A DNA stretch of 64,000 nucleotides, taken from positions 62,001-126,000 of the IMG/VR virus record IMGVR_UViG_3300025141_000016; one strand, written 5' to 3'. Both the position numbers and the translations under genes were made by a program. Below the pieces are notes generated by a model. The model ran no database searches. It was not told where the DNA came from and was given only the letters and a program-made list of their open reading frames with translations. Every line of letters begins with the position of its first letter. Position 1 is the first letter of the stretch. Positions 15,387 through 64,000 of this stretch are shown here, piece by piece.

Positions 15387-15863
15387 ATGGGTAAGCCATC
15401 TCCCAAGCGGGTGGCCTCGGCCTCTGGGTTCTTGTCAGCGTACAAGAAGTGGACTCTCCCACACCTGATGGGGGATTCCCGCTACCGCTCATGGTGGGTG
15501 GACCGTAAGGGCAACCTCATTGAGATGAAAAATGACCCCTCCGGGTTGACCGAGGACACCCTGTTCGCGGCCAACACCGTTCTCTGGAAAGGGGATGCAG
15601 ATGACGGTCAGGGGGACATTCACTTTGAGTACCTGACGGTGAACCGAGATTTGCGAGGTCATGGCGTGGGGTCAGCGGTGTTGAAGGAGATTATCAAGCT
15701 GGCCGACAAGGCGGGTGCGTCCCTCTCACTGGAACCCGATGAGCGCGGTGGCCTCCTCTCTACCTCCCAACTTTTCGCGTGGTATCGAAGACACAACTTT
15801 GAAACGGTCATCCACCCAGAGTGGGGTGAGATTGAGGAGATGCTTATTCGCCAGCCCAGGTAG
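15387..15863 (+). CDS. GNAT-family acetyltransferase with N-terminal PSPKRVAS tag
   Basis: Acetyl-CoA motif A LTVNRDLRGHGVGSAVL; WYRRHNF (motif B-like). Confidence 0.75.
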   Translation: MGKPSPKRVASASGFLSAYKKWTLPHLMGDSRYRSWWVDRKGNLIEMKNDPSGLTEDTLFAANTVLWKGDADDGQGDIHFEYLTVNRDLRGHGVGSAVLKEIIKLADKAGASLSLEPDERGGLLSTSQLFAWYRRHNFETVIHPEWGEIEEMLIRQPR

Positions 15864-15900
15864 GCTGCGCGGTAAGGTAGGACGCACCGGAGAGACTCTG

Positions 15901-16683
15901 ATGAACTTGATCGCCTACCGCTCGTCTGTCGTGACCCAAGACACTTACGAAGCCATGCGCCGTCTGGAGATTGCGGCGAAGGATGAGGGGTCTTCTGTCA
16001 TCCAGTACGAGGGGGTCCATCGGAGCAGTTGCTCCTGGCGCGGAGTCGAGGATGAGCCGGGGCCAACCGAACTGCCCCCTCCGTTCTCGATGCGACCAGC
16101 CGGGAGAGAGGTTTATCTCCGTGTCGAAGTGGATGACCCCCTCCGGGGTCTTGCGCTTCTGTGGTCTTTGGCTGTCCCGTTGGGGTTCATGCCCTGGGAC
16201 CGCTATCCGCTCCCCTCTCCTACTTCCCATGTGTTCCACTACCCCGGCCCCTGGTCCTCTGTGGGAGATTTCCTGCACGGGGAAGGGCGTGGACACCTTT
16301 CCTGGCCTTCGATGTGTGTGGCAGCCCAATGCGAGGCTGGAACATGGGAAGGAGATCGCCTCTCCGAGAGGTCGGTCCAAACCCACCTTCACCGGCTCGG
16401 CATCCATTGTGGGCCTGTAGACGGACAGATCGGCACCCTCACCCTCTCCTCATTGAAGGCGTTGGGGCTCGGGGGGATGGGGCTGGAGGAGGCTTTGGAA
16501 GCCTTGACGCGCATGAAAGTCCCGAAGCCCCCAGCCATGGATCGGCAGCGAGGGCATGTCGTGTTGAATGATGTGTCTATGGAAGCCTTTTCATCAGGAG
16601 GCGTTCACACTGTGCGAACGCGCAACGGCTACTCCCTCACAGTGGATGGCCCCGGACGCTTGGTTTTGATGGTAGGTGATTGA
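15901..16683 (+). CDS. Protein with peptidoglycan-binding (PG_binding_1-like) domain
   Basis: VQTHLHRLGIHCGPVDGQIGTLTLSSL. Start moved to ATG 15901, which follows a GGAGA RBS. Confidence 0.55.
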   Translation: MNLIAYRSSVVTQDTYEAMRRLEIAAKDEGSSVIQYEGVHRSSCSWRGVEDEPGPTELPPPFSMRPAGREVYLRVEVDDPLRGLALLWSLAVPLGFMPWDRYPLPSPTSHVFHYPGPWSSVGDFLHGEGRGHLSWPSMCVAAQCEAGTWEGDRLSERSVQTHLHRLGIHCGPVDGQIGTLTLSSLKALGLGGMGLEEALEALTRMKVPKPPAMDRQRGHVVLNDVSMEAFSSGGVHTVRTRNGYSLTVDGPGRLVLMVGD

Positions 16684-17321
16684 TGGCAAGCCCAACGCTC
16701 TATTTCCCTGAAGGTGTCCCAGCCCACATTCGGCGTATCGTGGACCCAGACCAGATCCACAAGCACGTCCAAGAGGGTCTAAAGGGGCTGGAGAGAGACT
16801 GGAAGTCCTTGGTTGATGAGGCTGCGGAGATCGTCAATGGGGACCGACCTTGGTGGTTGCGGGTTTTCGGGGGCAAGACCGAGGTCAGTCCTGAATGGCT
16901 TGCGGAACGTCTCTACCAGCGTCCCCGCACATGGCCCACAGGCTTGTCGGCAGAGGATAAGGACATGCTTCGCCTCTTGCGGGCAACCCGTGATCTGGGG
17001 TCGCCCTTATCTTTGAAGGCCCCCAACCGCGAGATGCCTCCTCCCGAGGAGGACATGACAAAGGCGTTCAAGATGATGGCGAAGGACACGCGCCTATTCA
17101 TCTCATTCGGCCTGATGAAAGCCTATGAGGCGATGCTCAAAAATGTTGGGAAGGAGATTGAGGGTCTGTGCGAGGGGTTGCTTGGAGAGTCGTGTGAAGA
17201 CGATGCCGTCGATGTGGTCCATGCGGATGTGGATGCGGCCATCAAGACCAACCAGATCCAAGGCATGTCGCGAGACGGCGCACGTCTCCTCCAAGAGTTC
17301 TATCGCCTCGTCTACGTCTAA
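16683..17321 (+). CDS. Hypothetical protein
   Basis: About 212-aa ORF coupled to the upstream stop. Confidence 0.6.
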   Translation: MASPTLYFPEGVPAHIRRIVDPDQIHKHVQEGLKGLERDWKSLVDEAAEIVNGDRPWWLRVFGGKTEVSPEWLAERLYQRPRTWPTGLSAEDKDMLRLLRATRDLGSPLSLKAPNREMPPPEEDMTKAFKMMAKDTRLFISFGLMKAYEAMLKNVGKEIEGLCEGLLGESCEDDAVDVVHADVDAAIKTNQIQGMSRDGARLLQEFYRLVYV

Positions 17322-17375
17322 TGGGGGGTGGTAGGCACTCTGCGTCGGGTATTCGACGGGGAAGAGGAGTGCCCA

Positions 17376-26896: not shown

Positions 26897-26911
26897 CGGT
26901 AGGGCGGCTAT
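26897..26911 (+). promoter_or_regulatory. Class L motif CGGTAG-N5-CTAT
   Basis: CGGTAGggcggCTAT upstream of 26940/27263. Confidence 0.6.
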
Positions 26912-26939: not shown

Positions 26940-27266
26940 TTGCGGGCTTACACCAAGACTGTTCCTGTTCGGGTTGAGGTGGACGTTTCCCACGTTCGCC
27001 CCCAGAACCCAGTAGTAGAGGATTCTCCTCTGGTGTCTCTGCGTGCGCGGATTTCTCTGTCGGTGGACGTTGCGGGTTTCCGGCAACCGCTTTGGGTGAA
27101 TGCGGAGATCCAACTCTCCCCCAACCAACCACCCAAACTCGTGTGGATGGACCCCATCTATGGGAACATCACGGGCTTCCAGAGCAAACAAGCCCTGGTC
27201 CCCTTCAGGGATGCCCTGATGATGGCTGTCAACGGCACCCGGTTGAAGATCCTGGGTGTGGAATGA
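26940..27266 (+). CDS. Hypothetical protein
   Basis: GGAGG RBS, TTG start, coupled to the next gene. Confidence 0.55.
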   Translation: MRAYTKTVPVRVEVDVSHVRPQNPVVEDSPLVSLRARISLSVDVAGFRQPLWVNAEIQLSPNQPPKLVWMDPIYGNITGFQSKQALVPFRDALMMAVNGTRLKILGVE

Positions 27267-29305
27267 ATCTGCCGTGCCCCCATCGGGTCATGCTCCGCTT
27301 CGCTTCTCTCACTGTCGAGGAGTTTGAGGGGAGGGTCGGGAGAAAAGACCACCTCACCAGATGGGAGGAAGGAACGATCCCTACCTCTGAAGCCCTGAAA
27401 ATCGAACCCCCACGCCGATACCATGGACGTAGGGAGTGGAATGAGCGAGGGGGGGAGCGGTACTTCGGCAACTACCCGGAGGCCAAATGGAACGAGTTTC
27501 TGGAGGACATACGCAAGAACGGGATCAAGACCCCCCTCTGGATCTTGGTAGACCCCGGCAAGGAGCCGTTGCTCATGGAAGGTAACCATCGGGTGCAGGC
27601 AGCGGCACAGTTGGGGTTGCGCGAGGTGCCGGTCACCATCAAGTATTACGGCTTGGCTGAAGAAGATGGGTTGGCTGCGCCTTCGGTCAGGAGAACCATC
27701 AAGCACCAAGACCCCGAGCGAGTCCGGGCGGCTAACCAGTGTTCTCCCCATCGGGTTGCACTCCGATATGCGGGGCTCTTTGAGCCTCCCCCCATGGTGT
27801 TGAAGGCGGTGACGGACTGGGCACAGTCTATGTGGGCTGGGCACGCACTGGCTCTGATGGACAAGACCCTTGATGGCCCCAAAGACGACAGTGGGGCGCG
27901 GATACGCAAGATGGAAGCCCTGTCTGACCGGAGGGCACTGAAAGATGCGTTGGAGAAAGCGTGGGACAAGCAGCGGATGATCCGCATCCCGGTGAACCCC
28001 CGGTACGACGTGGCGGTCAAAGCCCCCTCCGATGAAGACGATTTCGGCTACGCCCGAGCCTTTTACGAACTTGTCAGGAAGAAACAACGGGTGCAGTTCC
28101 CACGGATGCCTGGGGAGTACGCCCGCGACTCCGAGTGGGATGATTGGTACGGGGATCGCTACCCCCTGGACCACATAGCAGGCATCATCTCGACAGAGAT
28201 CGCTGAAGGACTACAGGAGTACGCCAAGCGGCAGGAATCCTCCAGTGAGGTGCGACGGCGGCATCTCAAGCCCGAGCACCTTGTGGAACTCTCACTCGTC
28301 CGACGGGAAGCCCGGAAGCACACCTCTCGGGCCAAGTCGTACAAGACCAAGGCTGCGACGGTGATCCCAGTTGATCTCACAGGCTGGAAGTACCTCAATG
28401 AAGTTCCCGCCAGCGAGGGTGACCTCAACGTCGCTGATTGGCAGGCATTGATGAAAACACGCCTGGAAGCTGCGAACTTCACTTCCTTCAAGTGCATCTT
28501 GTGGTTCAAGGCCCATAAGCGTCGAGGGGGTCAATGGTCCCCAGGCAGGATGAAGATGGAGTTGGATCTCTGGTCCACCAGCGTCTACGACCTGAAGTCG
28601 TTTCGGAGGGGGATGCAGCGTATTGCATCCATCGCCAAGCACGAGTGCATCCATCTGGGGCAAGATGCCCTGCGAATCGCCAAGGGGTTGAATGAGGATG
28701 CGGGGCTTCCTTCGCGTGACCTCCGCGAGCCTGGGGTGAACCCGAGCGGGACGCGCATAGACTCATGGTCAAGCAAGCGCATCCCCCACCCCAAGCGAGA
28801 TGTGGAGTTCTACACACGGCTGTCGGATGAGGTGTTGCGATTCAAGGAGGAAGTGCGGTCAGTGGCGAAGCCCCTACGCCGTAAGTTCTTCAAGGACTGG
28901 CTGGACCGCCGTCAGTTCTTCACGGCGAACAAGCGGAACCAGGGCAAGTGGCAGAAACTCGTTGGAGAGTTCTGGGCGGCCTTGGGGCGCGAGGGGATTG
29001 AGATCCCGAAAGCCCCACGCGCCAAGACCAAGCAAGAGGAAGGGACTGTGGTGTGGGTTGAGCCCGTGGGAAACAGCAACCTCTATGAGCCCCAATGGGC
29101 CATCATCCTTGAATACCTGGGCAAAAGCAGTTGGACGGAGACTGATCCCCTGACTGGTGAAGAACGAAGCCCACATCGGTACTCCCTGCAAGGGTTGAAA
29201 AAGTACATCGGGGATTGGAACGACACCGAGTTGAACCTCGACCGCACCCCACCACCACGGGTAGTGCAGCAACTTCAACGTGCCCTGCGCGGGAGTGTGG
29301 ACTGA
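27263..29305 (+). CDS. Multidomain protein: ParB/Srx-like domain plus zincin-like HExxH domain, with two RVxxRY/F tags
   Basis: DIRKNGIKTPL...LMEGNHRVQAAAQLGLREVPV (ParB-N); AKHECIHLGQ; PCPHRVMLRFA at the N-terminus and CSPHRVALRYA internally. Confidence 0.7.
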   Translation: MNLPCPHRVMLRFASLTVEEFEGRVGRKDHLTRWEEGTIPTSEALKIEPPRRYHGRREWNERGGERYFGNYPEAKWNEFLEDIRKNGIKTPLWILVDPGKEPLLMEGNHRVQAAAQLGLREVPVTIKYYGLAEEDGLAAPSVRRTIKHQDPERVRAANQCSPHRVALRYAGLFEPPPMVLKAVTDWAQSMWAGHALALMDKTLDGPKDDSGARIRKMEALSDRRALKDALEKAWDKQRMIRIPVNPRYDVAVKAPSDEDDFGYARAFYELVRKKQRVQFPRMPGEYARDSEWDDWYGDRYPLDHIAGIISTEIAEGLQEYAKRQESSSEVRRRHLKPEHLVELSLVRREARKHTSRAKSYKTKAATVIPVDLTGWKYLNEVPASEGDLNVADWQALMKTRLEAANFTSFKCILWFKAHKRRGGQWSPGRMKMELDLWSTSVYDLKSFRRGMQRIASIAKHECIHLGQDALRIAKGLNEDAGLPSRDLREPGVNPSGTRIDSWSSKRIPHPKRDVEFYTRLSDEVLRFKEEVRSVAKPLRRKFFKDWLDRRQFFTANKRNQGKWQKLVGEFWAALGREGIEIPKAPRAKTKQEEGTVVWVEPVGNSNLYEPQWAIILEYLGKSSWTETDPLTGEERSPHRYSLQGLKKYIGDWNDTELNLDRTPPPRVVQQLQRALRGSVD

Positions 29306-37121: not shown

Positions 37122-37176
37122 AGGGCCGATAGGCGCTCGCTGCCTTTTGTGGCGGTAGAGCGGCTATCGGCCCTTT
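37122..37176 (+). terminator. Long hairpin (probable terminator) overlapping a class L motif
   Basis: Outer stem AGGGCCGATAG/CTATCGGCCCT; inner CGCTC/GAGCG and GCTGCC/GGCGGT; followed by TTTCTCT. Confidence 0.55.
37153..37167 (+). promoter_or_regulatory. Class L motif
   Basis: CGGTAGagcggCTAT upstream of the baseplate operon. A CCAT variant lies at 37100-37114. Confidence 0.6.
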
Positions 37177-41853: not shown

Positions 41854-42156
41854 GTGGAGAAATCACCCTTACAATCCAAGAAGTTCCTCGCCTTCCTGCT
41901 CTCCGAGGTGACGTGGAAGATCATCATCATCGTCTGCGTGGTGAAACTCATTGATGACGCGGAAGGGGGACCACTCCTCCTCCACTGGGTCATGCTCACC
42001 GCAGTTCTCATCGCAGGGTTCATCGAGGCAGGATTCATTGGAGGACAAGCGTGGCTCGACAAGTACGTCCGTCTCGCCAAGATCACCACGGAGGCGGCAA
42101 CAGGAGCACCATCCCCCGACCCAGACCCAGAGGGTGCTGGCTCCAGTGATCGGTAG
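41854..42156 (+). CDS. Putative holin
   Basis: SKKFLAFLL N-terminus, two or more TM segments, directly before the endolysin. Confidence 0.6.
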   Translation: MEKSPLQSKKFLAFLLSEVTWKIIIIVCVVKLIDDAEGGPLLLHWVMLTAVLIAGFIEAGFIGGQAWLDKYVRLAKITTEAATGAPSPDPDPEGAGSSDR

Positions 42157-42179
42157 GTTCAACTATAGGAAGGTGAGTA

Positions 42180-44219: not shown

Positions 44220-45092
44220 GTGAACCACCCATCCCCCAGCCGTGTGGCCTCCCGCTGGATCAAAGCAGCCCCCGCCGTGGATCTTGATCCACGGAAGGTC
44301 TACTACCACGGGACACCCTCGGAGAAGGCGGGGAAGTCCATCCTCCGCTCTGGCATCGAACCGCCTGACCTTTCGACCCGCAAGGGTCCGCTTCGCCCTG
44401 TGGGCGGCAAGGTGTACCTGACTGACAAACTCTCCTATGGGGTCATCTACGCTCTCGGGGGGGCCGTGGCAGGACACGAGTATCCTGAGCGGCATTGGCA
44501 GGGCAGCGAGTGGGGATACCTGTTCGTGGTGCCGGGGAAGGCTCTCAAAGAAGTCCAGCCCGATGAAGATTCCGTGGGAGAGATGATCTCAAACTCGACT
44601 GGTCCCGGCTGGCTTGATGACTTGGCCGAAGAAATCCTTACGAAGAAACACCCAGCAGAACCCGAGCCTATCGCATTGTCCTATTCGTTCGACTTCGACA
44701 GCGACTTGAATGACAAGGCCAAAGAGCAGTTCTTTTCAGACACGGGGATTGACCCCAGTACGTTCGACTACCACGACGACCGAATCACCCTTGAAGGTTG
44801 GTTTTGGGACGAGGGTTCTTCCTACAACGAGGACTGGTTTTGGGAATATGAGCAAGGGAACCTGTACGACCTCGTGATGGACGGTGACTATGCCGCCTGG
44901 GCTGAAGCCGGAAAGATCCTACTTGGTGAGATGGACTCCGAACAGGAGTTGGAGTTGATCTCATTGGGGGCACACATCGCCCATGAAGGGAAGATCACCC
45001 CGACCGAGTGCTGGAAGATCCACAAGAGCAAGGCACCCCTGTTGAAGAAGAACGGGTCCAACTTCTTTCAGGTTGCGGAGCGGTGCCGATGA
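44220..45092 (+). CDS. ADP-ribosyltransferase-fold protein with N-terminal PSPSRVASRW tag
   Basis: YYHGT...ILRSGI...VYLT...Y.VIYA pattern of H-Y-type ART domains. Confidence 0.6.
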   Translation: MNHPSPSRVASRWIKAAPAVDLDPRKVYYHGTPSEKAGKSILRSGIEPPDLSTRKGPLRPVGGKVYLTDKLSYGVIYALGGAVAGHEYPERHWQGSEWGYLFVVPGKALKEVQPDEDSVGEMISNSTGPGWLDDLAEEILTKKHPAEPEPIALSYSFDFDSDLNDKAKEQFFSDTGIDPSTFDYHDDRITLEGWFWDEGSSYNEDWFWEYEQGNLYDLVMDGDYAAWAEAGKILLGEMDSEQELELISLGAHIAHEGKITPTECWKIHKSKAPLLKKNGSNFFQVAERCR

Positions 45093-45574
45093 CCAAGCCT
45101 TCCCCCAGCCGTGTAGCCTCCCGTTACCGAGAGGCCGCGATCACCTTTCGGGATGAGAGTTCGCCCCGTGTGCAGTACGCCCGACGGTTCTCACTGTGTG
45201 ACTCGGAAGCAGACCCACCCCGCAAGCGTGAGTACCTGTTCACGGATGAGTACCGAACCCACAACCGCAAGACATACAAGCGGTTGAAGAAGCCGGTGCT
45301 GGAGAGCCGTGGGGTCACCGACCCTTGCGACGTTGCCTACATCGACTACGGCGGGGGCGGGAAAGACCTGTATCTTCATCTGGTGATCACGCGAGAAGAC
45401 CACCGAGGGAAAGGGCTCGCCACAAGGCTACTCAAAGAGTTCTACTCCAAGAAGGTGCCCAAGGGAGCGGTTGTGCGCTGGGGTCGCATTATGAACCCAA
45501 CCAGCATGGCTCTGTTTGAGAAGATGAAGAAAGCACGCCCCGATGTGGTTCACATGGGCGGCAAGTTCTACTGA
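45089..45574 (+). CDS. GNAT-family acetyltransferase with N-terminal PSPSRVASRY tag
   Basis: LYLHLVITREDHRGKGLATRLL; NPTSMALFEK. Confidence 0.75.
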   Translation: MTKPSPSRVASRYREAAITFRDESSPRVQYARRFSLCDSEADPPRKREYLFTDEYRTHNRKTYKRLKKPVLESRGVTDPCDVAYIDYGGGGKDLYLHLVITREDHRGKGLATRLLKEFYSKKVPKGAVVRWGRIMNPTSMALFEKMKKARPDVVHMGGKFY

Positions 45575-46675: not shown

Positions 46676-47479
46676 TTGGGGTACACCGATATGTATGAGA
46701 AAAACGCCGGAATCAAGGAATGGATGGGGTGGATGGCACAGCCTCTTTCCGTCATCCTGAAAGGGCACAAAGACCTCATCTACGGACCCGTGGATGGCCT
46801 GATGGATGAAGTGATCCGTCAGATCGCTCCCCAGATTGTGAAGGCCATTGGAGAACGAGAGATCGATGAGGACGTGGAGGAGTTTCTGGAAGGTGCCCAG
46901 GAAGGCCGTTTCGATGCCCTTTCAGGCTACCTTGCTGACCCTGACCTCACGGCCCCCGACGATGAACAGGCGGGTTACGACTGGGGGTTTTCTCATGCCG
47001 AGGAATGGAAGGGAAAGACTCTCCCCACCGCTGTCGAGCGAAAGGTGGTGCAGGAGCAGATCAAGGAGTTCCGAAGCCGTGTCACAGAAGAAGTGGTCAT
47101 TGACCTCATGGAAAAGACATGGCACGCCCTATCACCCTCCCACACCATCAAGGCCATCATCAGGGCCGTCAAGAAGCATGGTTGGAAACTCGGTATCGGG
47201 TTTGTGCTCTTTGAGATCGTTGAGCACGCCCTCTTGCCAGCCGTGATGATCAAGCTGACGGGCAACCCCCACTGGGCTATTTTGGGCACCCTCCCCATCG
47301 GTGAGATCATCTACGCCATCGCCATGCGTGTGTTGGGCAGGGCAGACAAGAACTTGGACAAGTTGGACGAGGACGGTCACTTGGATTGGTATGAGGCCAA
47401 GTACGGCCCGGTGAGACTGGCCTCCCAACGTCGCCCTTCGTGTGAGCAAGTCGCATACCGCTACTGCACAGGGAGGTAG
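46676..47479 (+). CDS. Hypothetical protein with hydrophobic hairpin and C-terminal PSCEQVAYRY tag
   Basis: Hydrophobic region LGIGFVLFEIVEHALLPAVMI...; start uncertain (ATG 46691). Confidence 0.65.
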   Translation: MGYTDMYEKNAGIKEWMGWMAQPLSVILKGHKDLIYGPVDGLMDEVIRQIAPQIVKAIGEREIDEDVEEFLEGAQEGRFDALSGYLADPDLTAPDDEQAGYDWGFSHAEEWKGKTLPTAVERKVVQEQIKEFRSRVTEEVVIDLMEKTWHALSPSHTIKAIIRAVKKHGWKLGIGFVLFEIVEHALLPAVMIKLTGNPHWAILGTLPIGEIIYAIAMRVLGRADKNLDKLDEDGHLDWYEAKYGPVRLASQRRPSCEQVAYRYCTGR

Positions 47480-47481: not shown

Positions 47482-49344
47482 ATGAGCAGTTGCCCCATTC
47501 GGTCACAGGCATACGGCGGCCTCCCTTCCGTCGGGGGCTTCGGATCCATCATGGAGTTCGGAGTCGGGCTTGGGACCATCTTTGAGGCCGCTCATTGTCT
47601 ACTTGGCTCCCTCGGCAAGAATCTGGGGAGAGAGGATGACTGGGTGGCGATGCTCGGTGTCGAGAAAGGCCATCTGAACGAGGAAGCTGGGATCATCAAG
47701 GACGCCCTCCGTGAGTATGCTCGACCTGTCTACCGCGAGCAGATGCTCGACTTCTCCCAGTACAAGCCCGAGTGGCAGGAGAGGATGCGGGAGTCTGCGG
47801 AGAGGCAGGTCGAGGACATTCAACAGGCTGGACCCAAGTTGGCCTCTCTCGCCAAGGGTAGGGCATCGGCTTTTGTGGAAAATCTGGAAACGGAGGATGC
47901 CCCTGTCGAGTGGGTGAACACCGTTGAGGCCACCTACCTCATGGTGATCGCGTTGGCCGAGGCTGCGGTGAAGGCCGTGAATGACTGGCCCGACTCTATG
48001 GGGAACCCCTTTGCGGACCCCAAGGTGACCCGAGCCGCTGGGCTCATGGAAAAGCATCTCGCGGCTCTGTTCCGATGGGGATCCTCCCAGCGGGTTGCGC
48101 GTCGATACGCTTCCCAGAAGTTCCAGTGGACGCGCTCTCCCCTCTCCTACAACGTGAGCGGGACTGCGAAGCGGCTCGGACTCCTCGACTCGGAAGCAGG
48201 TGACCCCGATGAGTGGGAGACTTACTTCGCGGAAACCCAAAAGGAACTCCGCAAGAAGAACCGCCAGCGGTACAAAAAGCCTCGGTACGAAACAATCCCT
48301 GGTGCGGAACCTGGGACGGTTGCCTTCCTCGACTACCACGAGTTCCCAAACTACTACGGGGACGGGAAACTCTACCTTTACCTCGACTATGTATCGACTC
48401 GGCATGACCGGCTCGGTCAGGGGCACGCTCGGAAGCTGTTTGAGGAGATGCTGCGGAAGCACGGCAAGGACTCCCACTACGATTTCGGACGCATCGCGCA
48501 CAAGGCGGTCTACAAGATTTTCCGCGACTGGCAGTCGCGGGGGATCAACGTCCGGGGAAAGAACTGGGGCGGCTACACCGACGAGGAAGTCGGCCTCCGA
48601 AGCGCCTCTGCCGTCCGGGTCGTTGCTCGCTTTGAAAATCTCCGAAAAACAGACCGGCACACCGTCTACCACGGGACAGGCATCGGCCAACTCCCCCAGT
48701 TGATCAATGGGTTTGATGCAACCAAGATGAAAGGCCGAAGCTACAACACGCGCCCCCACAAAGGGATGTTTGTCTCACCCGACCTTGCCACTGCAAAGAA
48801 GTTCGGTCAGGTGATCCTTGAACTGGAAATCCCCGCCCGTTTCCTGCATGGGCGCGATTGGGCCGGAAAACCCTTACACCCCAAACTACAAGAGGAAGCG
48901 GAAGGGATGTTCCCCGAGTCGTTCCGCCCCGACCTCTCTTACATGCTGGAAGCCGGGGAACCACAGGCATTGGTTCTTGGCCTCGTTTCGCCCAGGCAGA
49001 TCCGCCGCGTGCTTTATGACGGGAAATGGTACTCCCGTAAAGACTTCCTCGCCCTCGACTGGGAAGACCTCAAAACCCCTCGCCGTCGCCCTATGCGCGA
49101 TCTCGGAGTGGATGTTTCTGATCCCAGCCTTTCGTGGGAGGACTTCATAGAAGCCAGCGCAACTCTCTTTGAGTCACCCGTCGCCCGCATCCAAAAAGTG
49201 CTTGGTCGTTGGGTGGAGCAAGGGAAGAACGCCCGCTGGGTGGCGAAGCAGCTTGAAGTGGTGTGGGAACCTCTCACCGCTCGTCGCTATGCCGAACGAT
49301 TCTTCGGGACGCAAGACAGGGAGGCACAGAGGGGGATGCCGTGA
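47482..49344 (+). CDS. Multidomain protein: helical domain plus GNAT plus ART-like domain, separated by RVxxRY/F motifs
   Basis: SSQRVARRYA; LYLDYVSTRHDRLGQGHARKLF (GNAT); ASAVRVVARF; VYHGT...GMFVSPDLATAKKFG..ILELEI (ART). Confidence 0.7.
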   Translation: MSSCPIRSQAYGGLPSVGGFGSIMEFGVGLGTIFEAAHCLLGSLGKNLGREDDWVAMLGVEKGHLNEEAGIIKDALREYARPVYREQMLDFSQYKPEWQERMRESAERQVEDIQQAGPKLASLAKGRASAFVENLETEDAPVEWVNTVEATYLMVIALAEAAVKAVNDWPDSMGNPFADPKVTRAAGLMEKHLAALFRWGSSQRVARRYASQKFQWTRSPLSYNVSGTAKRLGLLDSEAGDPDEWETYFAETQKELRKKNRQRYKKPRYETIPGAEPGTVAFLDYHEFPNYYGDGKLYLYLDYVSTRHDRLGQGHARKLFEEMLRKHGKDSHYDFGRIAHKAVYKIFRDWQSRGINVRGKNWGGYTDEEVGLRSASAVRVVARFENLRKTDRHTVYHGTGIGQLPQLINGFDATKMKGRSYNTRPHKGMFVSPDLATAKKFGQVILELEIPARFLHGRDWAGKPLHPKLQEEAEGMFPESFRPDLSYMLEAGEPQALVLGLVSPRQIRRVLYDGKWYSRKDFLALDWEDLKTPRRRPMRDLGVDVSDPSLSWEDFIEASATLFESPVARIQKVLGRWVEQGKNARWVAKQLEVVWEPLTARRYAERFFGTQDREAQRGMP

Positions 49345-51877: not shown

Positions 51878-51884
51878 TGCCCCA

Positions 51885-51919
51885 GGGGGGTTCAACTCGC
51901 CCCCCTATCTCCGTATAGG
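51885..51919 (+). promoter_or_regulatory. Class E promoter
   Basis: GGGGGGTTCAACTCGCCCCCCTATCTCCGTATAGG. Confidence 0.8.
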
Positions 51920-51977
51920 AGTGAGGCCCCCATCTATACCCTTTTCCAGCCCTGCATCGAGCAGGCAAGGAGCCCCT

Positions 51978-57575: not shown

Positions 57576-57971
57576 TCAACCCCAAAAACCCCGCTCCTCC
57601 AGCACATCGAACCAATGCGGTTCGGGCTGGGGGGGCGGGGTTTTTCTCGTTTGGGCTCCCGGTTTCCACCAGTCAGGGTCATCCAAGTTCGTGATGAGGT
57701 CGTAAAGTTCGACCGGGAGTTCCGCCAGGGCTCCTTCCTCAAACCATTCACCATCGTTGCGAGTGCCCCGATGGCGCATGGCACGGTGAATGCCGTGTTC
57801 CCGGTGACCCTGGTCGGGAGCGTGCAGGATCAGACGGAAGCGATGGGGGCACGCGGTCTGTAGTTGCTTCAATCTTCGGTGAACATCCTTTGACCTTCCC
57901 ACCTTCACAGCGCCCGTAGTGTCCATCTGAATGATATAGAGGTCTTGGCCTCGATTTAGGATTTGGGACAC
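57576..57971 (-). CDS. T5orf172/MUG113-type GIY-YIG domain protein
   Basis: LYIIQ...VKVGRSKDVHRRLKQLQTACP...EHGIH...GEWF; GTG start after GAGGA. Confidence 0.82.
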   Translation of the reverse strand: MSQILNRGQDLYIIQMDTTGAVKVGRSKDVHRRLKQLQTACPHRFRLILHAPDQGHREHGIHRAMRHRGTRNDGEWFEEGALAELPVELYDLITNLDDPDWWKPGAQTRKTPPPQPEPHWFDVLEERGFWG

Positions 57972-58639: not shown

Positions 58640-58957
58640 ATGCAAACCCCTACGACCGAAGCAACCCCCACGAACCCCACTCCCACCACCGAAAACGGTA
58701 GTGAGAATGGATCTTACGGCGAACTCGCACCAGAAGTGCTCAACGCTGTGACCCAACTCCGTGCCCGTAGCGAGGCCCTTGTGGCCGAGGTCGGTAGGAT
58801 GGAGATCCACAAGGCCGCTCTCACCCGTGAGGCTGTCGAGATCAACCAAAAGGCGCAGAGTCTTCTCCAACAGGAAGCCCAGCGTCTCGGAATCCCCAAC
58901 GGAACCTCGTGGCGGCTCACCCCCGAGGGAACCGCGATGGCTGTCGAGGACCGGTAG
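58640..58957 (+). CDS. Hypothetical coiled-coil protein
   Basis: GGAGG RBS. Confidence 0.65.
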   Translation: MQTPTTEATPTNPTPTTENGSENGSYGELAPEVLNAVTQLRARSEALVAEVGRMEIHKAALTREAVEINQKAQSLLQQEAQRLGIPNGTSWRLTPEGTAMAVEDR

Positions 58958-58966
58958 GCTGACTAT
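58952..58966 (+). promoter_or_regulatory. Class L motif
   Basis: CGGTAGgctgaCTAT upstream of 59011. Confidence 0.6.
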
Positions 58967-59010: not shown

Positions 59011-59739
59011 ATGTCCCGCACCTTTACTGCCGCTGACCGTTCTGCTCTCATCCGCCTTGCTTCCACACTCCCCGTGGGAAGCAAGGAACGGAAGGCTATC
59101 CTCCGTGGGTTGGTCAAGGTCGAGGCCAAGACTGCCAAGACCGCCATGGCCTTCAAGCTCCCCCATTTCCCCATCAAGGGAAAGGGGGACAAGGTGGTGG
59201 TGATGAAGCCTTTTGAGGCTGGGACGGAACCCTACGCGGGGGGGATGGTGCAAGGCCGTAAGATCAAAATGCGTCCCGGCAGCGTTCCAAACGGGTTCGT
59301 CATCGACATGATCAAGGGCTACAAGTCGAACCCATCATCTGCCATGATGGACCAACTCGGTCCCGCTGCGTGGCAGAACGATGAGCCTGACCAGTACCTT
59401 ATCAACTTCGGCGGCATGAAGGTTTACGTCACCGAAGATGACTGGAGAGACAAGAAAGTCATGGCTGTGCCGCCTCCGAAGGAATGGAGCACAAGCCTGC
59501 TCAAAGCATCCCAAGATGATCTCATGGAAGTCTTACGGGAGGAGATGGGGGTAGCTAATGACTACTCCTCCCGCACCCTGTGGCTTCACAACCCCAAAGA
59601 GGTCGCGAAAAAGTGGGATGAAGCCCACGGGCGGGGAGCATGGGGCAAGTTGTTGGTGGACAACCTCGTTCGCCAGTTGGGCGGTGAGTTTGAGGCCGAC
59701 GTTATGAAGTTCATTCGGGAAGAAGCCCGGAGCATGTAA
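59011..59739 (+). CDS. Hypothetical protein with DRSALIRLAS leader
   Basis: MSRTFTAADRSALIRLASTLPVGSKERKAILRGL...KTAKTA. Confidence 0.7.
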   Translation: MSRTFTAADRSALIRLASTLPVGSKERKAILRGLVKVEAKTAKTAMAFKLPHFPIKGKGDKVVVMKPFEAGTEPYAGGMVQGRKIKMRPGSVPNGFVIDMIKGYKSNPSSAMMDQLGPAAWQNDEPDQYLINFGGMKVYVTEDDWRDKKVMAVPPPKEWSTSLLKASQDDLMEVLREEMGVANDYSSRTLWLHNPKEVAKKWDEAHGRGAWGKLLVDNLVRQLGGEFEADVMKFIREEARSM

Positions 59740-59796: not shown

Positions 59797-61896
59797 ATGA
59801 CGACAGGGTGGGAACCAGTTGACGGCACATTCCCTTGGCCTCCGGCCAACGGTACGGCCATGTCTGCGTTCCACAGTTCGGATACCGACATTCGTTGGGA
59901 CGATCCCTCTACCCTCATCACAGGCCCCACCACTCCCTCTACACGGGCTACGGTGTCGGTCACGGTGGCGGGGATTCCTGACGTACTCACCGCCGCTACA
60001 GCGTCCTTTACAGTGGTCGGGGCTCCCATCACGGCAGGGGACACCATCGAGGTAGGTGGGGTTGTCGTGACTGCCGTTGCCGGTGTGCCTGGGGTGGACG
60101 AGTTCGACGGTTCCTCTGGTGTGGTGGCGACCGTTGCCACCAACATCGCTGCTGCCCTCAACGATGGCAGCGTCGGAGGATGGGGTATCGCCACCGCCGA
60201 GGCTGCACTCGGGGTCATCACCCTTACCGCAGGAACGGCAGGCGAGGCTGCAAACAGCACGACTCTTTCGTCGGACTCGGCTCTCATCACCGCATCTGGG
60301 AGCACGTTCTCTGGTGGTGCTGACCCCGACACCCTTACCATCGGGGGCGAGGTGCTGTCAGCGGTTACCACACGCACAGCGGGGGGCATGGACTTCGCAG
60401 TTGGCCCCTCCAACTTTGACACTGCCCAGAGCATCACCGATGCGATCAACGACTCGGACAACACGTTGGGGTTCATCAGCGCCACCGTATCGGGTGACAT
60501 AGTGCTCATCGCCGCGTTCCTCGACGGGACGATGGGCGATGGGATCATCATCTCGACCACCAATACGACCGCCCTGGTGACCAGTGACTCGCAGACCACC
60601 GGGGGAGAGGGAGTTGCCTGCACTGGGAAGTCCAATACCGTGTGGGAGATCCTTGGGGTCAACGTCTACCGGTCGGACACTGGGGAGCGAGGCCCCTATT
60701 TCCGGGTGAACAGCATCCCTGTGATGACCAACTTCTACCGGGATCGCACCGATGTTGTGGAAGTGACCGGCGAGGGGATCGCTTGGGCTACGGGGTGGGT
60801 CTTCCGAGGGAGTGCGCCGAACCAGCCCAATGTGTGGCGGCTCCGGGTCAAAAACCATGAGATGGTCAAGCGAACCGGGAACGCGGTTGCGGCTGACTCC
60901 TCCTTCGATGTGGAGGTTTACATCGACGGAGCACGGGTGCCGGTTGCCCAGGTATCGGGGTCAGTGGGGGAGATCACTCTCGACACCATGCCTGTTTGGA
61001 ACCAAGGCACGGATTCGTGGGATGAGTTCACGGCCCCCACAGACACCAGTTCGGTGACGGTCAGCTACTTCTGGAAGCGTGGGAACAAGCTGGTCAACAC
61101 CCTCGACAAACGCTCCAAGGTCTTCTATCGACTCACCACCGTTGCCATCGACACGTCGAGCACGACGGGCTTGATCGAGACACCGATGGGGTACTCGGAA
61201 CCCATCTCTCCGATGAACAGCGAGAAGATGGACTACATCTGGCGTGAGGCCATCCGGCGCAACCGCTGGATTCTGGAGCAGGGGGGCGAGAGGGTCAAGT
61301 TGTTCATCCGGCGTATCACTGGGGTCAAGTGCGACTGCATCTGGGATCCCAGGCTGGAGGAATACTCCCAGCAACCCCTGAACTCTTGCGTGAAGTGCTA
61401 TGGCACTGGCTGGCGCGGGGGGTACGAAGGCCCCATCGACATTATCGTCGGACCAGACGACACCGAACGGCGAGTGACGCAGACGGCCAATGGACGGCAG
61501 TTGCAGCATCAGTACGAGGTCTGGATTGGACCGACCCCCACGGTCAGCCAACGGGACTTCATCGTCAAGCAGAACGGCGAACGCTACAGCATTGGGCCTA
61601 CCCGCCGCACCCAGGTCCGTGGGGTCATCCTCCAACAGTCCTTCCAGATCGGCTACCTCGACACCACCGACATTCGGTACAAGGTGCCGATGGGCCAGTT
61701 GGAACGACTGCCTTGGCCCCAGACTCGGTACACTCGACCGGAAGACGCGCCCTGCAAGACCGCTGAACCGTATCCGGTGGGGTACGACTACCAAGCATCC
61801 CCCATGGGGACAGAGGTCAACAAGATCGATGATGCTCGTGAGCAGCGGGGTCGGACTCCCGTGTGGGCCAACATCACTTATGGCGGGGGTGGGTAA
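59797..61896 (+). CDS. Putative virion structural protein (head-tail/neck-like) with C-terminal Zn-finger domain
   Basis: T/G/A-rich duplicated domain (TITV/IGG...F...TAxxIxxAIND); C-terminal CDC...CVKCYGTG, RDFIV. Confidence 0.6.
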   Translation: MTTGWEPVDGTFPWPPANGTAMSAFHSSDTDIRWDDPSTLITGPTTPSTRATVSVTVAGIPDVLTAATASFTVVGAPITAGDTIEVGGVVVTAVAGVPGVDEFDGSSGVVATVATNIAAALNDGSVGGWGIATAEAALGVITLTAGTAGEAANSTTLSSDSALITASGSTFSGGADPDTLTIGGEVLSAVTTRTAGGMDFAVGPSNFDTAQSITDAINDSDNTLGFISATVSGDIVLIAAFLDGTMGDGIIISTTNTTALVTSDSQTTGGEGVACTGKSNTVWEILGVNVYRSDTGERGPYFRVNSIPVMTNFYRDRTDVVEVTGEGIAWATGWVFRGSAPNQPNVWRLRVKNHEMVKRTGNAVAADSSFDVEVYIDGARVPVAQVSGSVGEITLDTMPVWNQGTDSWDEFTAPTDTSSVTVSYFWKRGNKLVNTLDKRSKVFYRLTTVAIDTSSTTGLIETPMGYSEPISPMNSEKMDYIWREAIRRNRWILEQGGERVKLFIRRITGVKCDCIWDPRLEEYSQQPLNSCVKCYGTGWRGGYEGPIDIIVGPDDTERRVTQTANGRQLQHQYEVWIGPTPTVSQRDFIVKQNGERYSIGPTRRTQVRGVILQQSFQIGYLDTTDIRYKVPMGQLERLPWPQTRYTRPEDAPCKTAEPYPVGYDYQASPMGTEVNKIDDAREQRGRTPVWANITYGGGG

Positions 61897-62474
61897 TGCC
61901 AGCGCCAAGGCTGTTCCACACTACATCATGGAGGGAAGCTGAAAAGGCGTTGAAGACAGGCAAGATCACCAGCATCTCTCCCTTCATCTCCTTGTCCGAG
62001 AAGCCCCTGTTCGGGGGAGACATTCGCCACGGCGACGTGGCTCTGGTCCTCGATGCGGGTGGGATCAAAGGTCAACTGGTCAAGGTGGAGTACACCGAGC
62101 GTTGGGCCGAAGCCAACCCCGAGCAGACTTCCTACATCGCAGGCGAGGGGTGGCGAGAGCAGTTCACTTACCCAGAGGACTGCGTTGACGAGGAAGGCTG
62201 GGAAGACGACGAGTGCATGGAACGGGCGTACCACGAGGCCGAGGTTGACTCTTTCCTTTGGAAATCCGACGAAGCTGAATGGCTCACGAAGCGGGAGGGC
62301 GCTCCTCTCTCTGTAGGCGGGGCAATCACGGGGCTTCTCGTCCCCGATGAGCGCAGCAAGGGACACGCGGAATCACTCATGGGGGGTCTTGGGCTGGACT
62401 TGCCGGTATTCATAGGGAGAGGAGCGTCGGCTGTGCGTGTTGCAAAGCGGTTTCTTCTGGGAGATGCCGCATGA
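61896..62474 (+). CDS. ART-fold-like protein with C-terminal ASAVRVAKRF tag
   Basis: LFHTT...ISLSE...VALVLD...DEAEW. Confidence 0.5.
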   Translation: MPAPRLFHTTSWREAEKALKTGKITSISPFISLSEKPLFGGDIRHGDVALVLDAGGIKGQLVKVEYTERWAEANPEQTSYIAGEGWREQFTYPEDCVDEEGWEDDECMERAYHEAEVDSFLWKSDEAEWLTKREGAPLSVGGAITGLLVPDERSKGHAESLMGGLGLDLPVFIGRGASAVRVAKRFLLGDAA

Positions 62475-62767
62475 CTGCTACTGAAATCCTGAACCAACTC
62501 CAGCAACACAACCCCGAGGCGCTGCTCTTGGAGCCCCGCGAGGTCTACGACAAGGCTCTGGTTGGGGTCACGAACACCCCTGACGACCATTGGCCGCGCA
62601 CTAACGGCATCTGGGTAGCGGTGTATGACGAGGAACTGTGCCTGGAAGCCATCATGGAATGGCATGAGTGTGGTTACAGCGATGCCGCTGACTGGTTCGG
62701 CCACAACACTTCCGGGGCATGGGCTGGGGAGGGCACTCCGACGTTCCGCTCACACGGCGAGGAATGA
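62471..62767 (+). CDS. Conserved-type phage hypothetical protein
   Basis: YDKALVGV...AVYD...DAADWFGHNTSGAWAGEGTP. Confidence 0.7.
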   Translation: MTATEILNQLQQHNPEALLLEPREVYDKALVGVTNTPDDHWPRTNGIWVAVYDEELCLEAIMEWHECGYSDAADWFGHNTSGAWAGEGTPTFRSHGEE

Positions 62768-62788
62768 CCCAGAGCGCCCCCCTCGGGG

Positions 62789-62803
62789 CGGTACTTCCTT
62801 TAT
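62789..62803 (+). promoter_or_regulatory. Class L motif
   Basis: CGGTACttcctTTAT upstream of 62830. Confidence 0.55.
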
Positions 62804-62829
62804 GGGAAGGTAGGGTGGCAGGAGTGTGA

Positions 62830-64000
62830 ATGGAATCCCTACCCAAAATGCAGGCCGTTGTAGATCGGCTTCATATAGACGGGGTGTTGTGGCCTCACAT
62901 GGATGTGTATTTCGACTACCAGCGGGTTCCCGCAAAGTTGAAGGATCATGCCGCATGGTGGGTGTATAGAGGCTCGCACAAAGATATGCTGTTCAAGGCT
63001 TGGCGTGCGCTCCCCCCAGAACAGAAGGAAGCCCTCGACATCGCCAACGAAGCCGCCCATCAAGGATCTACGCTGACCCTCTACCGAACCCCCACCGGAA
63101 CAGAGCACACCGATCATGCAGGGGCCTCCTTCACGACGGACAAGAGCTTGTGGGGCGACGAAGGCTACGCGGTGCGTGTGCCCGTGGGTGATGTGTTGAT
63201 CTCCTACAAGACTCCGGGCTTCGAGGACATCTTCAACAACCAACGATACGGGCACGAGAAGGAGGTCATCCTCAAACCGACCGCATCAGCCGCTCGGGTC
63301 GCTTCCCGGTACATTCGGGCAGGTGGGTCGTTTCCTGCTATGCAATCCGCTGTGGACCGGCTCTACAATGAGGGTGTCATCGACTACCCCATCGAGGTCC
63401 GGTACTTCGGCCCCAGTGGTAGTGGGAACGTCGAGATTCAACTCCTCAAAGACGGTCGCCCCGGTGACTACGCTGGTCACTTCTTCACGTCCAAGCACGC
63501 GGATGGGTGGGAATCTCCGAGCACCTTGCGGGGGATCTCCGATCCATGCTTGAAGGCATACCGTAAGGTGCGGCGCAAGAACAAAGGCGCAGGTCTATGG
63601 TCAGTCCAATGGGCTTTCCTGAAGGACAAGGCCCTGTGGGGTCACGGGCTTGGCAAGATGGCCTACGAACAGATCCTCAAAGACGCGGGCAAGTTTGGGG
63701 CTGTCGTGTTCCCTGCATGGTGCGCCACAGGAGGGTCCACTACTCCGATGGCACAGCGAGTGTGGGACTCCGTAGGGAAACGCCATAGCACCGAAGGGGT
63801 GGTTGTCATCCCCAAGAACCTCCGGGTCGCTTCGACGGTAGGCGTTGCGACTCGGTACGCGAACCGCACACTCACCCAACAGACCCAACGGCTGGAGAGT
63901 GCCGTCACAGCCTTCATGGACGCTCTGCGGGAAACGGGGCGAGCCATCGGAGGGTGGAGGCGCAAGCCAATGCCCCCAGGCACCCCGGCTGCTATGCGGG
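62830..64000 (+). CDS. Multidomain protein (3'-truncated): R-S-E ART-like domain plus GNAT-like domain, separated by RVASRY motifs
   Basis: Absent from the ORF track (no stop in the window). Translated by eye: MESLPKMQAVVDRL...LTLYR...ASFTT...HEKEVIL-KPTASAARVASRYIRA...LWGHGLGKMAY...TPMAQRVWDS...RVASTVGVATRYAN. Confidence 0.75.
   Translation, partial: MESLPKMQAVVDRLHIDGVLWPHMDVYFDYQRVPAKLKDHAAWWVYRGSHKDMLFKAWRALPPEQKEALDIANEAAHQGSTLTLYRTPTGTEHTDHAGASFTTDKSLWGDEGYAVRVPVGDVLISYKTPGFEDIFNNQRYGHEKEVILKPTASAARVASRYIRAGGSFPAMQSAVDRLYNEGVIDYPIEVRYFGPSGSGNVEIQLLKDGRPGDYAGHFFTSKHADGWESPSTLRGISDPCLKAYRKVRRKNKGAGLWSVQWAFLKDKALWGHGLGKMAYEQILKDAGKFGAVVFPAWCATGGSTTPMAQRVWDSVGKRHSTEGVVVIPKNLRVASTVGVATRYANRTLTQQTQRLESAVTAFMDALRETGRAIGGWRRKPMPPGTPAAMR

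What the first reader, a model, noticed from the sequence alone, without database searches (positions are those of the whole stretch)
15387..64000. Peptide-tagged effector 'cargo' system: S-x-x-R-V-A-x-R-[YFW] marks termini and domain junctions of GNAT/ART/ParB/zincin proteins
Seen: a short motif recurs in otherwise unrelated proteins. Copies: PSPKRVASAS (15396, GNAT N-terminus); PCPHRVMLRFA (27272) and CSPHRVALRYA (27740), flanking the ParB-like domain; PSPSRVASRW (44229, ART-like); PSPSRVASRY (45098, GNAT); PSCEQVAYRY (~47435, C-terminus); SSQRVARRYA (~48082) and ASAVRVVARF (~48604), exactly between the helical/GNAT and GNAT/ART domains; ASAVRVAKRF (~62424, C-terminus); ASAARVASRY (~63283) and STVGVATRY (~63832), between domains. 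I did not notice it in the replication enzymes or class E genes. Carrier genes lie in units headed by the class L motif shared with baseplate and structural genes. Established: large phages package internal head proteins that are targeted and processed by the prohead protease (T4 IPs and Alt ADP-ribosyltransferase, phiKZ ejection proteins), and 'polyvalent' phage proteins combine GNAT, ART, ParB and zincin domains. Inference: the motif is a portable capsid-loading and/or maturation-cleavage tag. It would let the phage swap host-modifying enzymes into an injected payload and split polyproteins into single enzymes.
Basis: partly seen in the sequence, partly recalled or inferred. Interest (0 to 1): 0.9.

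Follow-up and report, generated by a model that had tools for sequence, protein, structure and literature searches.

The report
Portable address peptide on phage effector modules
A 10-residue peptide ([A/P]-S-[A/P]-x-R-V-A-x-R-[Y/F/W]) marks the ends and every domain junction of the host-modifying "polyvalent" enzymes of an uncultured 297-kb marine phage, and it most likely acts as the label by which the phage loads these enzymes into its particle and cuts them apart, though neither step has been shown.

Summary
All 11 peptides are at the stated coordinates. The core RV[AVMI]xR[YFW] occurs 8 times in coding frames and never in the other five frames (0.12 expected by shuffling). Synonymous codons differ between copies, so conservation is at the peptide level. 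The window is bases 62,001-126,000 of a 297-kb marine metagenome phage contig. That phage holds at least 19 copies in 11 proteins. One is a 1519-aa polyprotein with five copies delimiting ParB, HExxH and GNAT modules. Another is a Pfam ART-PolyVal protein that starts with the tag. None was found in replication, baseplate or fibre proteins. Across relatives I collected 79 non-redundant copies. Of the 53 in complete proteins, 22 lie within 12 residues of an end (3.3 expected). The rest sit at domain junctions. Fused and split versions of the same gene pair break exactly at the tag. In other phage lineages the same modules carry different short leaders at the same position. One such leader family matches the head-protease signature of a T4-type head module that encodes it. 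The capsid-loading and cleavage reading is therefore well motivated but unproven. I could not reach this phage's capsid or protease genes. This is a new variant of a known kind (T4 capsid-targeting sequences, polyvalent proteins).

The parts
15396..15425 (+). Tag copy 1 (degenerate, PSPKRVASAS), N-terminus of carrier A
   Evidence: 25.4 bits
15387..15863 (+). Carrier A, 158-aa GNAT. It lies 8 nt downstream of the 1778-aa fibre-like gene.
   Evidence: Pfam Acetyltransf_1, E = 5e-5; gap table
27272..27301 (+). Tag copy 2 (PCPHRVMLRF), N-terminus of carrier B
27740..27769 (+). Tag copy 3 (CSPHRVALRY), junction between the ParB-like module and the HExxH module of B
   Evidence: 34.6 bits; ParB_N at aa 73-128
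27263..29305 (+). Carrier B, 680 aa: tag, ParB-like module, tag, then a large module with HECIH. This is the ParB-then-peptidase-motif order that PMC5512222 describes for P1 DdrB.
   Evidence: PMC5512222
44229..44258 (+). Tag copy 4 (PSPSRVASRW), N-terminus of carrier C
44220..45092 (+). Carrier C, 290 aa, no family hit. The ART-like call rests only on a YHGT-type motif and is unverified.
45098..45127 (+). Tag copy 5 (PSPSRVASRY), N-terminus of carrier D
45089..45574 (+). Carrier D, 161-aa GNAT, paralogous to the GNAT module of F
   Evidence: Pfam; BLASTP E = 3e-14
47435..47464 (+). Tag copy 6 (degenerate, PSCEQVAYRY), 4 residues before the stop of carrier E
46676..47479 (+). Carrier E, 267 aa, with a hydrophobic C-terminal half. 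In relative P0015 it is fused to the F helical module through the tag.
48082..48108 (+). Tag copy 7 (SSQRVARRY), junction between the helical and GNAT modules of F
   Evidence: AF2 confidence drops at residues 201-220
48604..48633 (+). Tag copy 8 (ASAVRVVARF), junction between the GNAT and ART-PolyVal-like modules of F
   Evidence: homologue module starts
47482..49344 (+). Carrier F, 620 aa: helical module, tag, GNAT, tag, ART-PolyVal-like module
62424..62453 (+). Tag copy 9 (ASAVRVAKRF), 6 residues before the stop of carrier G
61896..62474 (+). Carrier G, 192 aa. Its start overlaps the stop of the 699-aa gene at 59797-61896.
63283..63312 (+). Tag copy 10 (ASAARVASRY), between modules 1 and 2 of H
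63832..63858 (+). Tag copy 11 (degenerate, STVGVATRY), between modules 2 and 3 of H
62830..64000 (+). Carrier H. It runs off the window and is 1005 aa in full, with a third copy (RVVARH) near aa 906.
9965..9978 (+). Promoter-like element GGTAG-N5-CTAT heading the fibre gene plus carrier A
26898..26911 (+). Promoter-like element heading 26940-27266 plus carrier B
37154..37167 (+). Promoter-like element heading the baseplate unit (sheath initiator, baseplate J)
42152..42166 (+). Promoter-like element heading the M23 tail-lysin gene. Carriers C and D follow downstream on the same strand.
58953..58966 (+). Promoter-like element heading 59011, the 699-aa gene and carrier G

Best explanation
The motif is a lineage-specific, portable address and processing peptide of the phage's polyvalent effector proteins. 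These are GNAT, ART-PolyVal, ParB, NUDIX, HExxH and other modules. The tag is about 10-13 residues long with consensus [A/P]-S-[A/P]-x-R-V-A-x-R-[Y/F/W/H]. It is predicted helical and lies in the flexible stretch between modules. Single-module proteins carry one copy at an end, and multi-module proteins carry one at each junction. The mechanism I think most likely is the following. A phage-encoded head-assembly component, most probably the prohead core together with its maturation protease, recognises the tag. Tagged proteins are thereby taken into the prohead, and polyproteins are cut into separate enzymes that are later ejected with the DNA. T4 does the same with its capsid-targeting sequences and gp21. 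SHOWN: the motif is real, is peptide-level, is autonomous, sits at module boundaries and termini, and is restricted to effector-type proteins. It is conserved within a clade of marine phages of about 53-63% GC. It is replaced at the same position by other leader families in other lineages, and one of those coincides with the head-protease signature of a T4-type head module. INFERRED: what recognises the tag, that it is cleaved, where it is cleaved, and that the carriers are packaged.
For: The enrichment and frame specificity are strong. Synonymous codons vary between copies. The same tag is attached to unrelated sequences: C and D are alike only in residues 1-17. Gene fission and fusion occur exactly at the tag. 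E and F are split by a stop and a start 4 residues after the tag, whereas P0015 fuses the same two modules through it. The 1519-aa polyprotein has five tags delimiting ParB, HExxH, GNAT and other modules. The adjacent protein has a solid Pfam ART-PolyVal hit and starts with the tag. All six N-terminal copies in this phage have the Arg at residue 8-9. I collected 79 non-redundant copies. In complete proteins 22 of 53 lie within 12 aa of an end, against 3.3 expected. Tags fall between Pfam domains in L079, P0043 and B. In the AF2 model of F they fall where confidence collapses. No tag was found in about 135 kb of the contig outside effector-type proteins, including a run of large fibre-like proteins. 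Homologous helical, GNAT and ART modules in other lineages carry at least five other leader families at the same position, each shared between different modules and found both N-terminally and internally. In those upstream windows [LI]xE occurs in 52 of 116 cases, against 30% in random windows. P0102, a relative of the '...LE-AIS' leader family, lies in a head module with Portal_T4, Peptidase_S77 and Gp23. There the [LIVM]-[LV]-E-[AG] signature also occurs in the capsid protein's N-terminal region and in the scaffold-position protein. The precedent is T4, where 10-19-residue capsid-targeting sequences are removed by gp21 and the ART Alt is cut at both termini (PMC9026906). A promoter-like element is shared with baseplate, fibre and lysin units.
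Against: No capsid, scaffold, portal or prohead-protease gene of this phage was found, so the key prediction that they carry the tag is untested. The tag contains no Glu and matches no known prohead-protease site, neither T4 [LI]-x-E nor SPN3US A-x-E. A Glu two residues after the aromatic occurs in only 9% of copies. The carriers are not next to recognisable head genes. The link between a leader family and a T4-type head module rests on one lineage: only 1 of 80 other Gp23-type loci held a cargo module. G2 (62471-62767), which follows the C-terminally tagged G, has no tag. The promoter-like element is not strict for all carriers, and its timing is unknown. The helical prediction for the tag has low confidence.
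Confidence: 0.48

Rival explanations
1. The tag is the site at which the co-encoded HExxH (zincin-like) modules cut polyvalent proteins, before packaging or after injection. This is the processing that Iyer et al. proposed for polyvalent proteins. Terminal tags on single-module proteins would then be docking sites for that peptidase, or products of gene fission.
For: HExxH modules are themselves tag-flanked cargo in B and twice in the 1519-aa polyprotein, and they have homologues in P0003, P0011 and P0050. PMC5512222 predicts processing of polyvalent proteins by zincin-like peptidases and cites P1 DdrB (ParB plus a C-terminal peptidase), which is processed and packaged. A separate SprT-like gene lies next to B.
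Against: The zincin assignment is not confirmed. There is no Pfam hit. The hhalign comparison to the SprT-like neighbour aligns only the HExxH helix, at 1% probability. The AF2 model is unusable, with mean pLDDT 36. Junction peptides differ between lineages that share homologous modules. In one lineage they match the head protease's signature rather than any zincin-specific one. The strict register and conservation of N-terminal tags on single-domain proteins is hard to explain by cleavage at junctions alone.
Confidence: 0.2
2. The tag is a docking peptide that is not cleaved. It attaches diverse enzymes to one common receptor, either a virion scaffold, core or tail component (as encapsulin cargo-loading peptides or dockerins do) or a host target. 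Multi-module proteins stay intact.
For: The tag is a short, autonomous, probably amphipathic helix with two invariant Arg and one aromatic residue. It occurs at either terminus or internally. Several carriers lie downstream of baseplate, lysin and fibre genes rather than head genes. N4 vRNAP is an example of an unprocessed packaged polyvalent protein (PMC5512222).
Against: The same module pairs occur fused or split exactly at the tag, which suggests the separated state is functional. The analogous leaders in the T4-type lineage coincide with a protease signature. No receptor candidate was identified.
Confidence: 0.15
3. The peptide is an evolutionary seam. It is a conserved linker at which modules are shuffled by recombination or gene fission and fusion, and it has no recognition function of its own.
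For: The tags sit exactly at the boundaries of shuffled modules. Fusion and fission variants exist. Many different module combinations are seen.
Against: Recombination seams need DNA identity, yet the copies differ freely at synonymous sites. The peptide is kept at the free termini of single-module proteins across diverged orthologues, for example at the C-termini of E-type proteins 55-60% identical to E. It keeps a fixed N-terminal register. Other lineages maintain their own distinct peptides at the same place.
Confidence: 0.08

Closest known systems
T4 capsid-targeting sequences (CTS) of internal proteins and Alt, processed by prohead protease gp21
   Same: Both are short leaders (10-19 aa in T4, about 13 aa here) on otherwise unrelated small proteins, including an ADP-ribosyltransferase. 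The leader is portable between cargoes. T4 Alt is processed at both termini, and tags occur at both termini here. In a T4-type relative (L196) the homologous ART module is preceded by the head-protease signature.
   Different: The sequence is unrelated, with no Glu and no [LI]-x-E. The tag also occurs internally, at every junction of multi-domain proteins. The carriers are not in a recognisable head gene cluster. Neither packaging nor cleavage has been shown. The protease type of this phage is unknown.
Polyvalent proteins of phages and conjugative elements (Iyer et al. 2017, PMC5512222)
   Same: The domain repertoire and logic are the same: ART-PolyVal, ParB as in DdrB, HExxH peptidase-like, GNAT, NUDIX, Topo IB and NTase domains strung in one polypeptide. 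That paper predicts that such proteins are delivered with the DNA and processed.
   Different: That work describes no conserved junction or terminal peptide. In this phage each module boundary carries the same 10-residue tag, and stand-alone single-domain genes carry it too.
Propeptides of phiKZ/SPN3US-type giant phage head and ejection proteins (gp245, A-x-E)
   Same: Giant phages package many ejection proteins, and one protease motif is shared by capsid, portal and ejection proteins (PMC10052503).
   Different: Those propeptides are mostly long (111-254 aa) and N-terminal, and their motif is A-x-E. The tag in this window is short and occurs at either end or internally, and its sequence is different.
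Encapsulin cargo-loading peptides (from my own knowledge, not tested)
   Same: Both are short terminal peptides that address diverse enzymes to the interior of an HK97-fold shell.
   Different: The consensus is different, there is no cleavage, and the compartments are bacterial. No shell interaction could be tested for this tag.

Membership tests
Polyvalent proteins (Iyer et al. 2017) | Two or more effector-type domains (ART, ParB, peptidase, GNAT, NUDIX and others) in one polypeptide of a phage or mobile element | tested here: met
   F has helical, GNAT and ART-PolyVal-like modules. B has a ParB-like module and an HExxH module. The 1519-aa protein has ParB (twice), HExxH (twice) and GNAT-like modules. 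The neighbouring 445-aa protein has a solid Pfam ART-PolyVal hit.
Polyvalent proteins (Iyer et al. 2017) | Packaged in the capsid and delivered with the DNA | not testable with these tools
   The phage is uncultured and has no proteome. The only support is indirect: a promoter-like element shared with structural units.
T4-type capsid-targeting sequence | A short N-terminal leader (10-19 aa) shared by otherwise unrelated small proteins | tested here: met
   Six proteins start M-x-x-P-x-[PA]-x-R-V-A-x-R-[YFW] with the Arg at residue 8-9. C and D are alike only in residues 1-17.
T4-type capsid-targeting sequence | The leader ends in the prohead-protease site [LI]-x-E | tested here: not met
   The tag has no conserved Glu. 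Glu at +7 occurs in 9% of 79 copies.
T4-type capsid-targeting sequence | The same protease motif is present in the capsid protein, scaffold and protease of the same phage | not tested
   The head genes of this contig were not reached. The feature is met in the T4-type relative L196 for its own motif.
T4-type capsid-targeting sequence | The leader is necessary and sufficient for packaging and is removed during maturation | not testable with these tools
   This needs experiment.
phiKZ/SPN3US-type propeptide | Cleavage after [S/A/G]-x-E; long N-terminal propeptides | tested here: not met
   The motif lacks Glu and is about 10 aa long, not 100-250 aa (PMC10052503).
Zincin-like metallopeptidase of polyvalent proteins | Sequence or profile membership in a zincin family with HExxH in the active-site helix | tested here: inconclusive
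   HExxH is conserved in the module family. There is no Pfam hit. hhalign to the SprT-like neighbour aligns only 16 columns at 1% probability. The AF2 model has pLDDT 36.
ART-PolyVal (PF18760) | A Pfam profile match above the gathering score | tested here: inconclusive
   For F's third module there are only sub-threshold hits in homologues: P0026 1e-5, P0050 7e-5, and P0020, P0027 and P0047 at 0.05-0.09. The tag-led 445-aa protein on the same contig has an unmarked hit on record, meaning E at most 1e-5. Carrier C has no hit.

The most novel reading that the evidence does not exclude
Each phage lineage has its own short 'address label', and this label, not the enzyme domains, decides what is loaded into the virion and where polyproteins are cut. 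RVAxRY would be the first such label that is independent of the Glu-specific head proteases. It would be read by a dedicated receptor or protease yet to be found. Any protein could then be made an injected cargo by adding about 13 residues, and the injected proteome of uncultured phages could be read from sequence by finding the genome's recurrent terminal and junction peptide.
Probability: 0.2. Interest if true: 0.85.

Novelty: new variant of a known kind. Interest (0 to 1): 0.72.

Why it matters
Polyvalent proteins are widespread, but how they are packaged and separated into working enzymes is not known. A defined 10-residue peptide at each boundary turns that question into testable experiments on binding, cleavage and packaging of tag fusions. 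It also gives a sequence rule for listing the probable injected effectors of an uncultured giant phage: 11 proteins and at least 25 modules in this one. The same method, looking for a genome's recurrent terminal or junction peptide, found at least five other leader families in other lineages, so it may be general. If the tag is sufficient for loading, it would also be a compact handle for engineering protein delivery by phage particles in laboratory systems.

Tried and rejected
1. DNA-level repeat: rejected, because synonymous sites vary.

2. Motif as part of paralogous domains: rejected. Only D and F-GNAT are paralogous, and C and D share only the tag.

3. Whole-genome census in the nearest complete record: LR745208.1 (485 kb, 43% aa identity at baseplate J) has only 8 six-frame hits, about what chance would give by my rough estimate. 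The tag system is therefore clade-specific and that genome was no help.

4. Finding head genes:
- The Tunturi_5 portal gave no tblastn hit.
- Walking the contig covered roughly 54-162 kb and 181-205 kb in JGI coordinates; a related 32-kb contig showed the gene neighbourhood just left of the second stretch. No capsid, protease or portal label appeared. An 11.5-kb gene blocked the walk.
- A scan with the strict promoter-like element found only the two copies inside the window.
- A Gp23-type capsid bait returned only closer T4-type contigs.

5. IMG/VR scans with the back-translated tag were productive for A-S-A: they found the 1519-aa polyprotein and other large contigs. One hit, L085, is a false positive, because its RVALRY belongs to the conserved N-terminus of a tail-tube family.

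6. A Glu just after the tag as a hidden [x]-x-E site: not general, at 9%.

7. Cultured-phage homologues of the ART and helical modules: none. P0094 hit only an unrelated C-terminal part.

8. PDB sequence searches of C and H found nothing, and B gave only a weak Spo0J match. A fold search of the F model found no significant match.

9. Zincin confirmation by AF2 and hhalign failed.

10. Generality of cargo modules beside T4-type capsid genes: only 1 of 80 loci. That link rests on one lineage.

Full report
**What the window is.** It is about 59% GC and nearly all genes are on the + strand. Pfam shows a contractile-tailed phage. It has beta-helix fibre proteins, SNF2, DnaB, a primase Zn-finger, PolA, NAD ligase, sheath initiator, baseplate J and an M23 plus PG-binding lysin. 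The window is bases 62,001-126,000 of JGI metagenome contig Ga0209756_1000003, which is 297,104 bp and is also IMGVR_UViG_3300025141_000016. No cultured relative exists at the DNA level. The nearest record by protein is an uncultured 485-kb phage, with 43% identity at baseplate J.

**Check of the observation.**
- Codons under the motif vary at synonymous positions, so the peptide is conserved rather than the DNA.
- RV[AVMI]xR[YFW] occurs 8 times in coding frames and 0 times in the other five frames.
- The shuffled proteome gives a mean of 0.118 and a maximum of 2 in 1000 shuffles. With the upstream Ser the count is 7 against 0.008.
- A PSSM scan is bimodal: 11 sites score 23-35 bits, and the next best scores 10, which is within the null.
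- None is in replication, baseplate, lysin or fibre proteins.
- Four copies begin proteins with the Arg at residue 8, two lie within the last 15 residues, and five are internal.

**What the carriers are.**
- A and D are GNAT by Pfam.
- B has a weak ParB-N, supported by Pfam, PHROGs and PDB Spo0J, followed by a large module with HECIH.
- F has a confident all-helical module, a GNAT paralogous to D, and a third module. Homologues of that third module touch Pfam ART-PolyVal below threshold.
- C, E, G and H have no family hit.
- 'Zincin' could not be confirmed beyond HExxH.

**The tag is autonomous.**
- Among the carriers only D and F-GNAT are paralogous. C and D are alike only in residues 1-17.
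- E ends 4 residues after its tag and F starts 2 nt later. Relative P0015 fuses these two modules through the tag.
- In the AF2 model of F both tags are helical, but they sit where pLDDT falls from above 90 to 40-60.
- Tags fall between Pfam domains in B, P0043 and L079.

**Census in the same phage.** H is 1005 aa in full and has a third copy. The 604-aa weak-NUDIX protein two genes on has one. An IMG/VR scan with the back-translated tag found a 1519-aa protein at about 190-195 kb. It has five tags, at aa 9, 685, 867, 1038 and 1393. The tags delimit:
- a first segment with ParB-like, HExxH and GNAT-like parts;
- a GNAT module;
- an unknown module;
- an HExxH module homologous to that of B;
- a second ParB-like module.

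The next gene is a Pfam ART-PolyVal protein that starts with the tag. The total is 19 tags in 11 proteins, and all six N-terminal copies have the Arg at residue 8-9. No tag occurs in the other sequence examined on the contig, including a run of large fibre-like proteins.

**Relatives.**
- Homologues of F carry the tag at N-termini, at C-termini and at junctions, with different partner domains such as PAP2, ParB, an HExxH module and SWIM.
- Metagenome and IMG/VR loci of 53-63% GC carry it too. They include contigs of 205-435 kb and a 2495-aa protein with 2'-5' ligase-like, NTase, Topo IB and GNAT domains.
- The 485-kb phage and low-GC relatives lack it. In those relatives the helical module stands alone.
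- I collected 79 non-redundant copies. Their profile is A38/P25, S59, A48/P20, x, R, V, A87, x, R, Y53/F24/W11/H11 (numbers are percentages).
- In complete proteins 22 of 53 copies are within 12 aa of an end, against 3.3 expected.

**The comparative clue.** Upstream of the same modules, other lineages carry other short peptide families. Each family is shared between different modules and found both N-terminally and internally. Many end in [LI]-x-E: 52 of 116 upstream windows, against 30% of random windows.

One member, P0102, lies in a head module with Portal_T4, Peptidase_S77 and a Gp23-type capsid protein. In that module [LIVM]-[LV]-E-[AG] occurs in four places:
- in the capsid protein's N-terminal region;
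- twice in the scaffold-position protein;
- at P0102's junction just before its ART module;
- near the C-terminus of a small neighbouring protein.

So in that lineage the junction peptide equals the head-maturation signature. T4 shows that such leaders target proteins to the prohead core and are then removed, and that the ART Alt is cut at both ends (PMC9026906). This link rests on one lineage: only 1 of 80 other Gp23-type loci held a cargo module.

**Expression context.** GGTAG-N5-6-CTAT has 5 copies against 0.37 expected, and all are intergenic and on the + strand. It heads the fibre unit (with A), the unit with B, the baseplate unit, the lysin unit (with C and D downstream) and the unit leading to G. 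It recurs elsewhere on the contig, but only as a one-mismatch form before the polyprotein. Its timing is inferred.

**Conclusion.** The tag is a real, portable, clade-specific boundary and terminal peptide of polyvalent effector proteins. I rank the explanations as follows.
- Most likely (0.48): it is the signal read by the head-assembly and maturation machinery for loading and cutting.
- 0.20: it is the cleavage site of the co-encoded HExxH modules, as proposed in general terms in PMC5512222.
- 0.15: it is an uncleaved docking peptide.
- 0.08: it is a mere recombination seam, which the synonymous variation and the conserved free-terminal copies argue against.

The literature library holds no paper that links capsid-targeting sequences with polyvalent proteins. 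The decisive test is whether this phage's capsid, scaffold or protease carries the tag, and I could not run it because those genes were not reached.

Noticed in passing
window upstream of 19026, 34015, 34617, 49554, 54941, 56758: A second, longer intergenic element GGGGGGTTCAACTC...(G)TATCTCCGTATA occurs at six gene starts. It is distinct from the GGTAG-N-CTAT class and is probably another promoter or regulatory class.
   Followed up: partly
L194:16059-18200 (own contig, about 196-198 kb in JGI coordinates); also the 45-aa ORF just upstream of the 1519-aa gene: Three consecutive genes (186, 334 and 174 aa) share a different conserved N-terminal leader of about 35 aa (M-x-KTITAxDRxxLIRLAS...ERKAILAGL). 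A similar stretch lies in the small ORF before the polyprotein. This may be a second address or leader family in the same phage.
   Followed up: no
P0030 (3298 aa), P0034, L030: Another lineage uses a repeated junction element of about 30 aa (PPPG[YW]...[KR]IG-x-[FW]-R-[KR]...W-x-Y-W-[KY]-P). P0030 has at least 6 copies, and the element also occurs before the helical module in L030 and P0034. It has no Pfam hit.
   Followed up: partly
window 34617-35747, 50200-50718, 51618-52469; 42906-43835 and 59011-59739: Short shared segments occur between otherwise unrelated proteins. The C-terminal 50-75 aa of three proteins are alike, and a 39-aa stretch is shared by two others at 56% identity. These may be further portable pieces.
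   Followed up: no
L012:17352-18365 (own contig, about 131.8 kb): A 337-aa protein has a Pfam Volactin (actin-like) hit in a jumbo phage, next to an RNase T-like exonuclease.
   Followed up: no
window about 57576-57971, minus strand (L012:5106-5501): A T5orf172/MUG113-type gene, like a homing endonuclease, lies on the opposite strand among + strand genes.
   Followed up: no
L195:14202-15623 and 16197-17273 (related 32-kb contig): An AcrVA2-like protein and a glutamine synthetase are encoded near the polyprotein locus of a close relative.
   Followed up: no
L032 (Ga0080013_1000001, 552,571 bp): A 552-kb metagenome contig carries a copy of the E/F region whose helical module is 100% identical in protein. 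This may be a concatemeric or chimeric assembly of the same phage.
   Followed up: no
window 45568-46431, minus strand: A 287-aa minus-strand ORF with a good coding score sits between carriers D and E. Its function is unknown and it has no tag.
   Followed up: no
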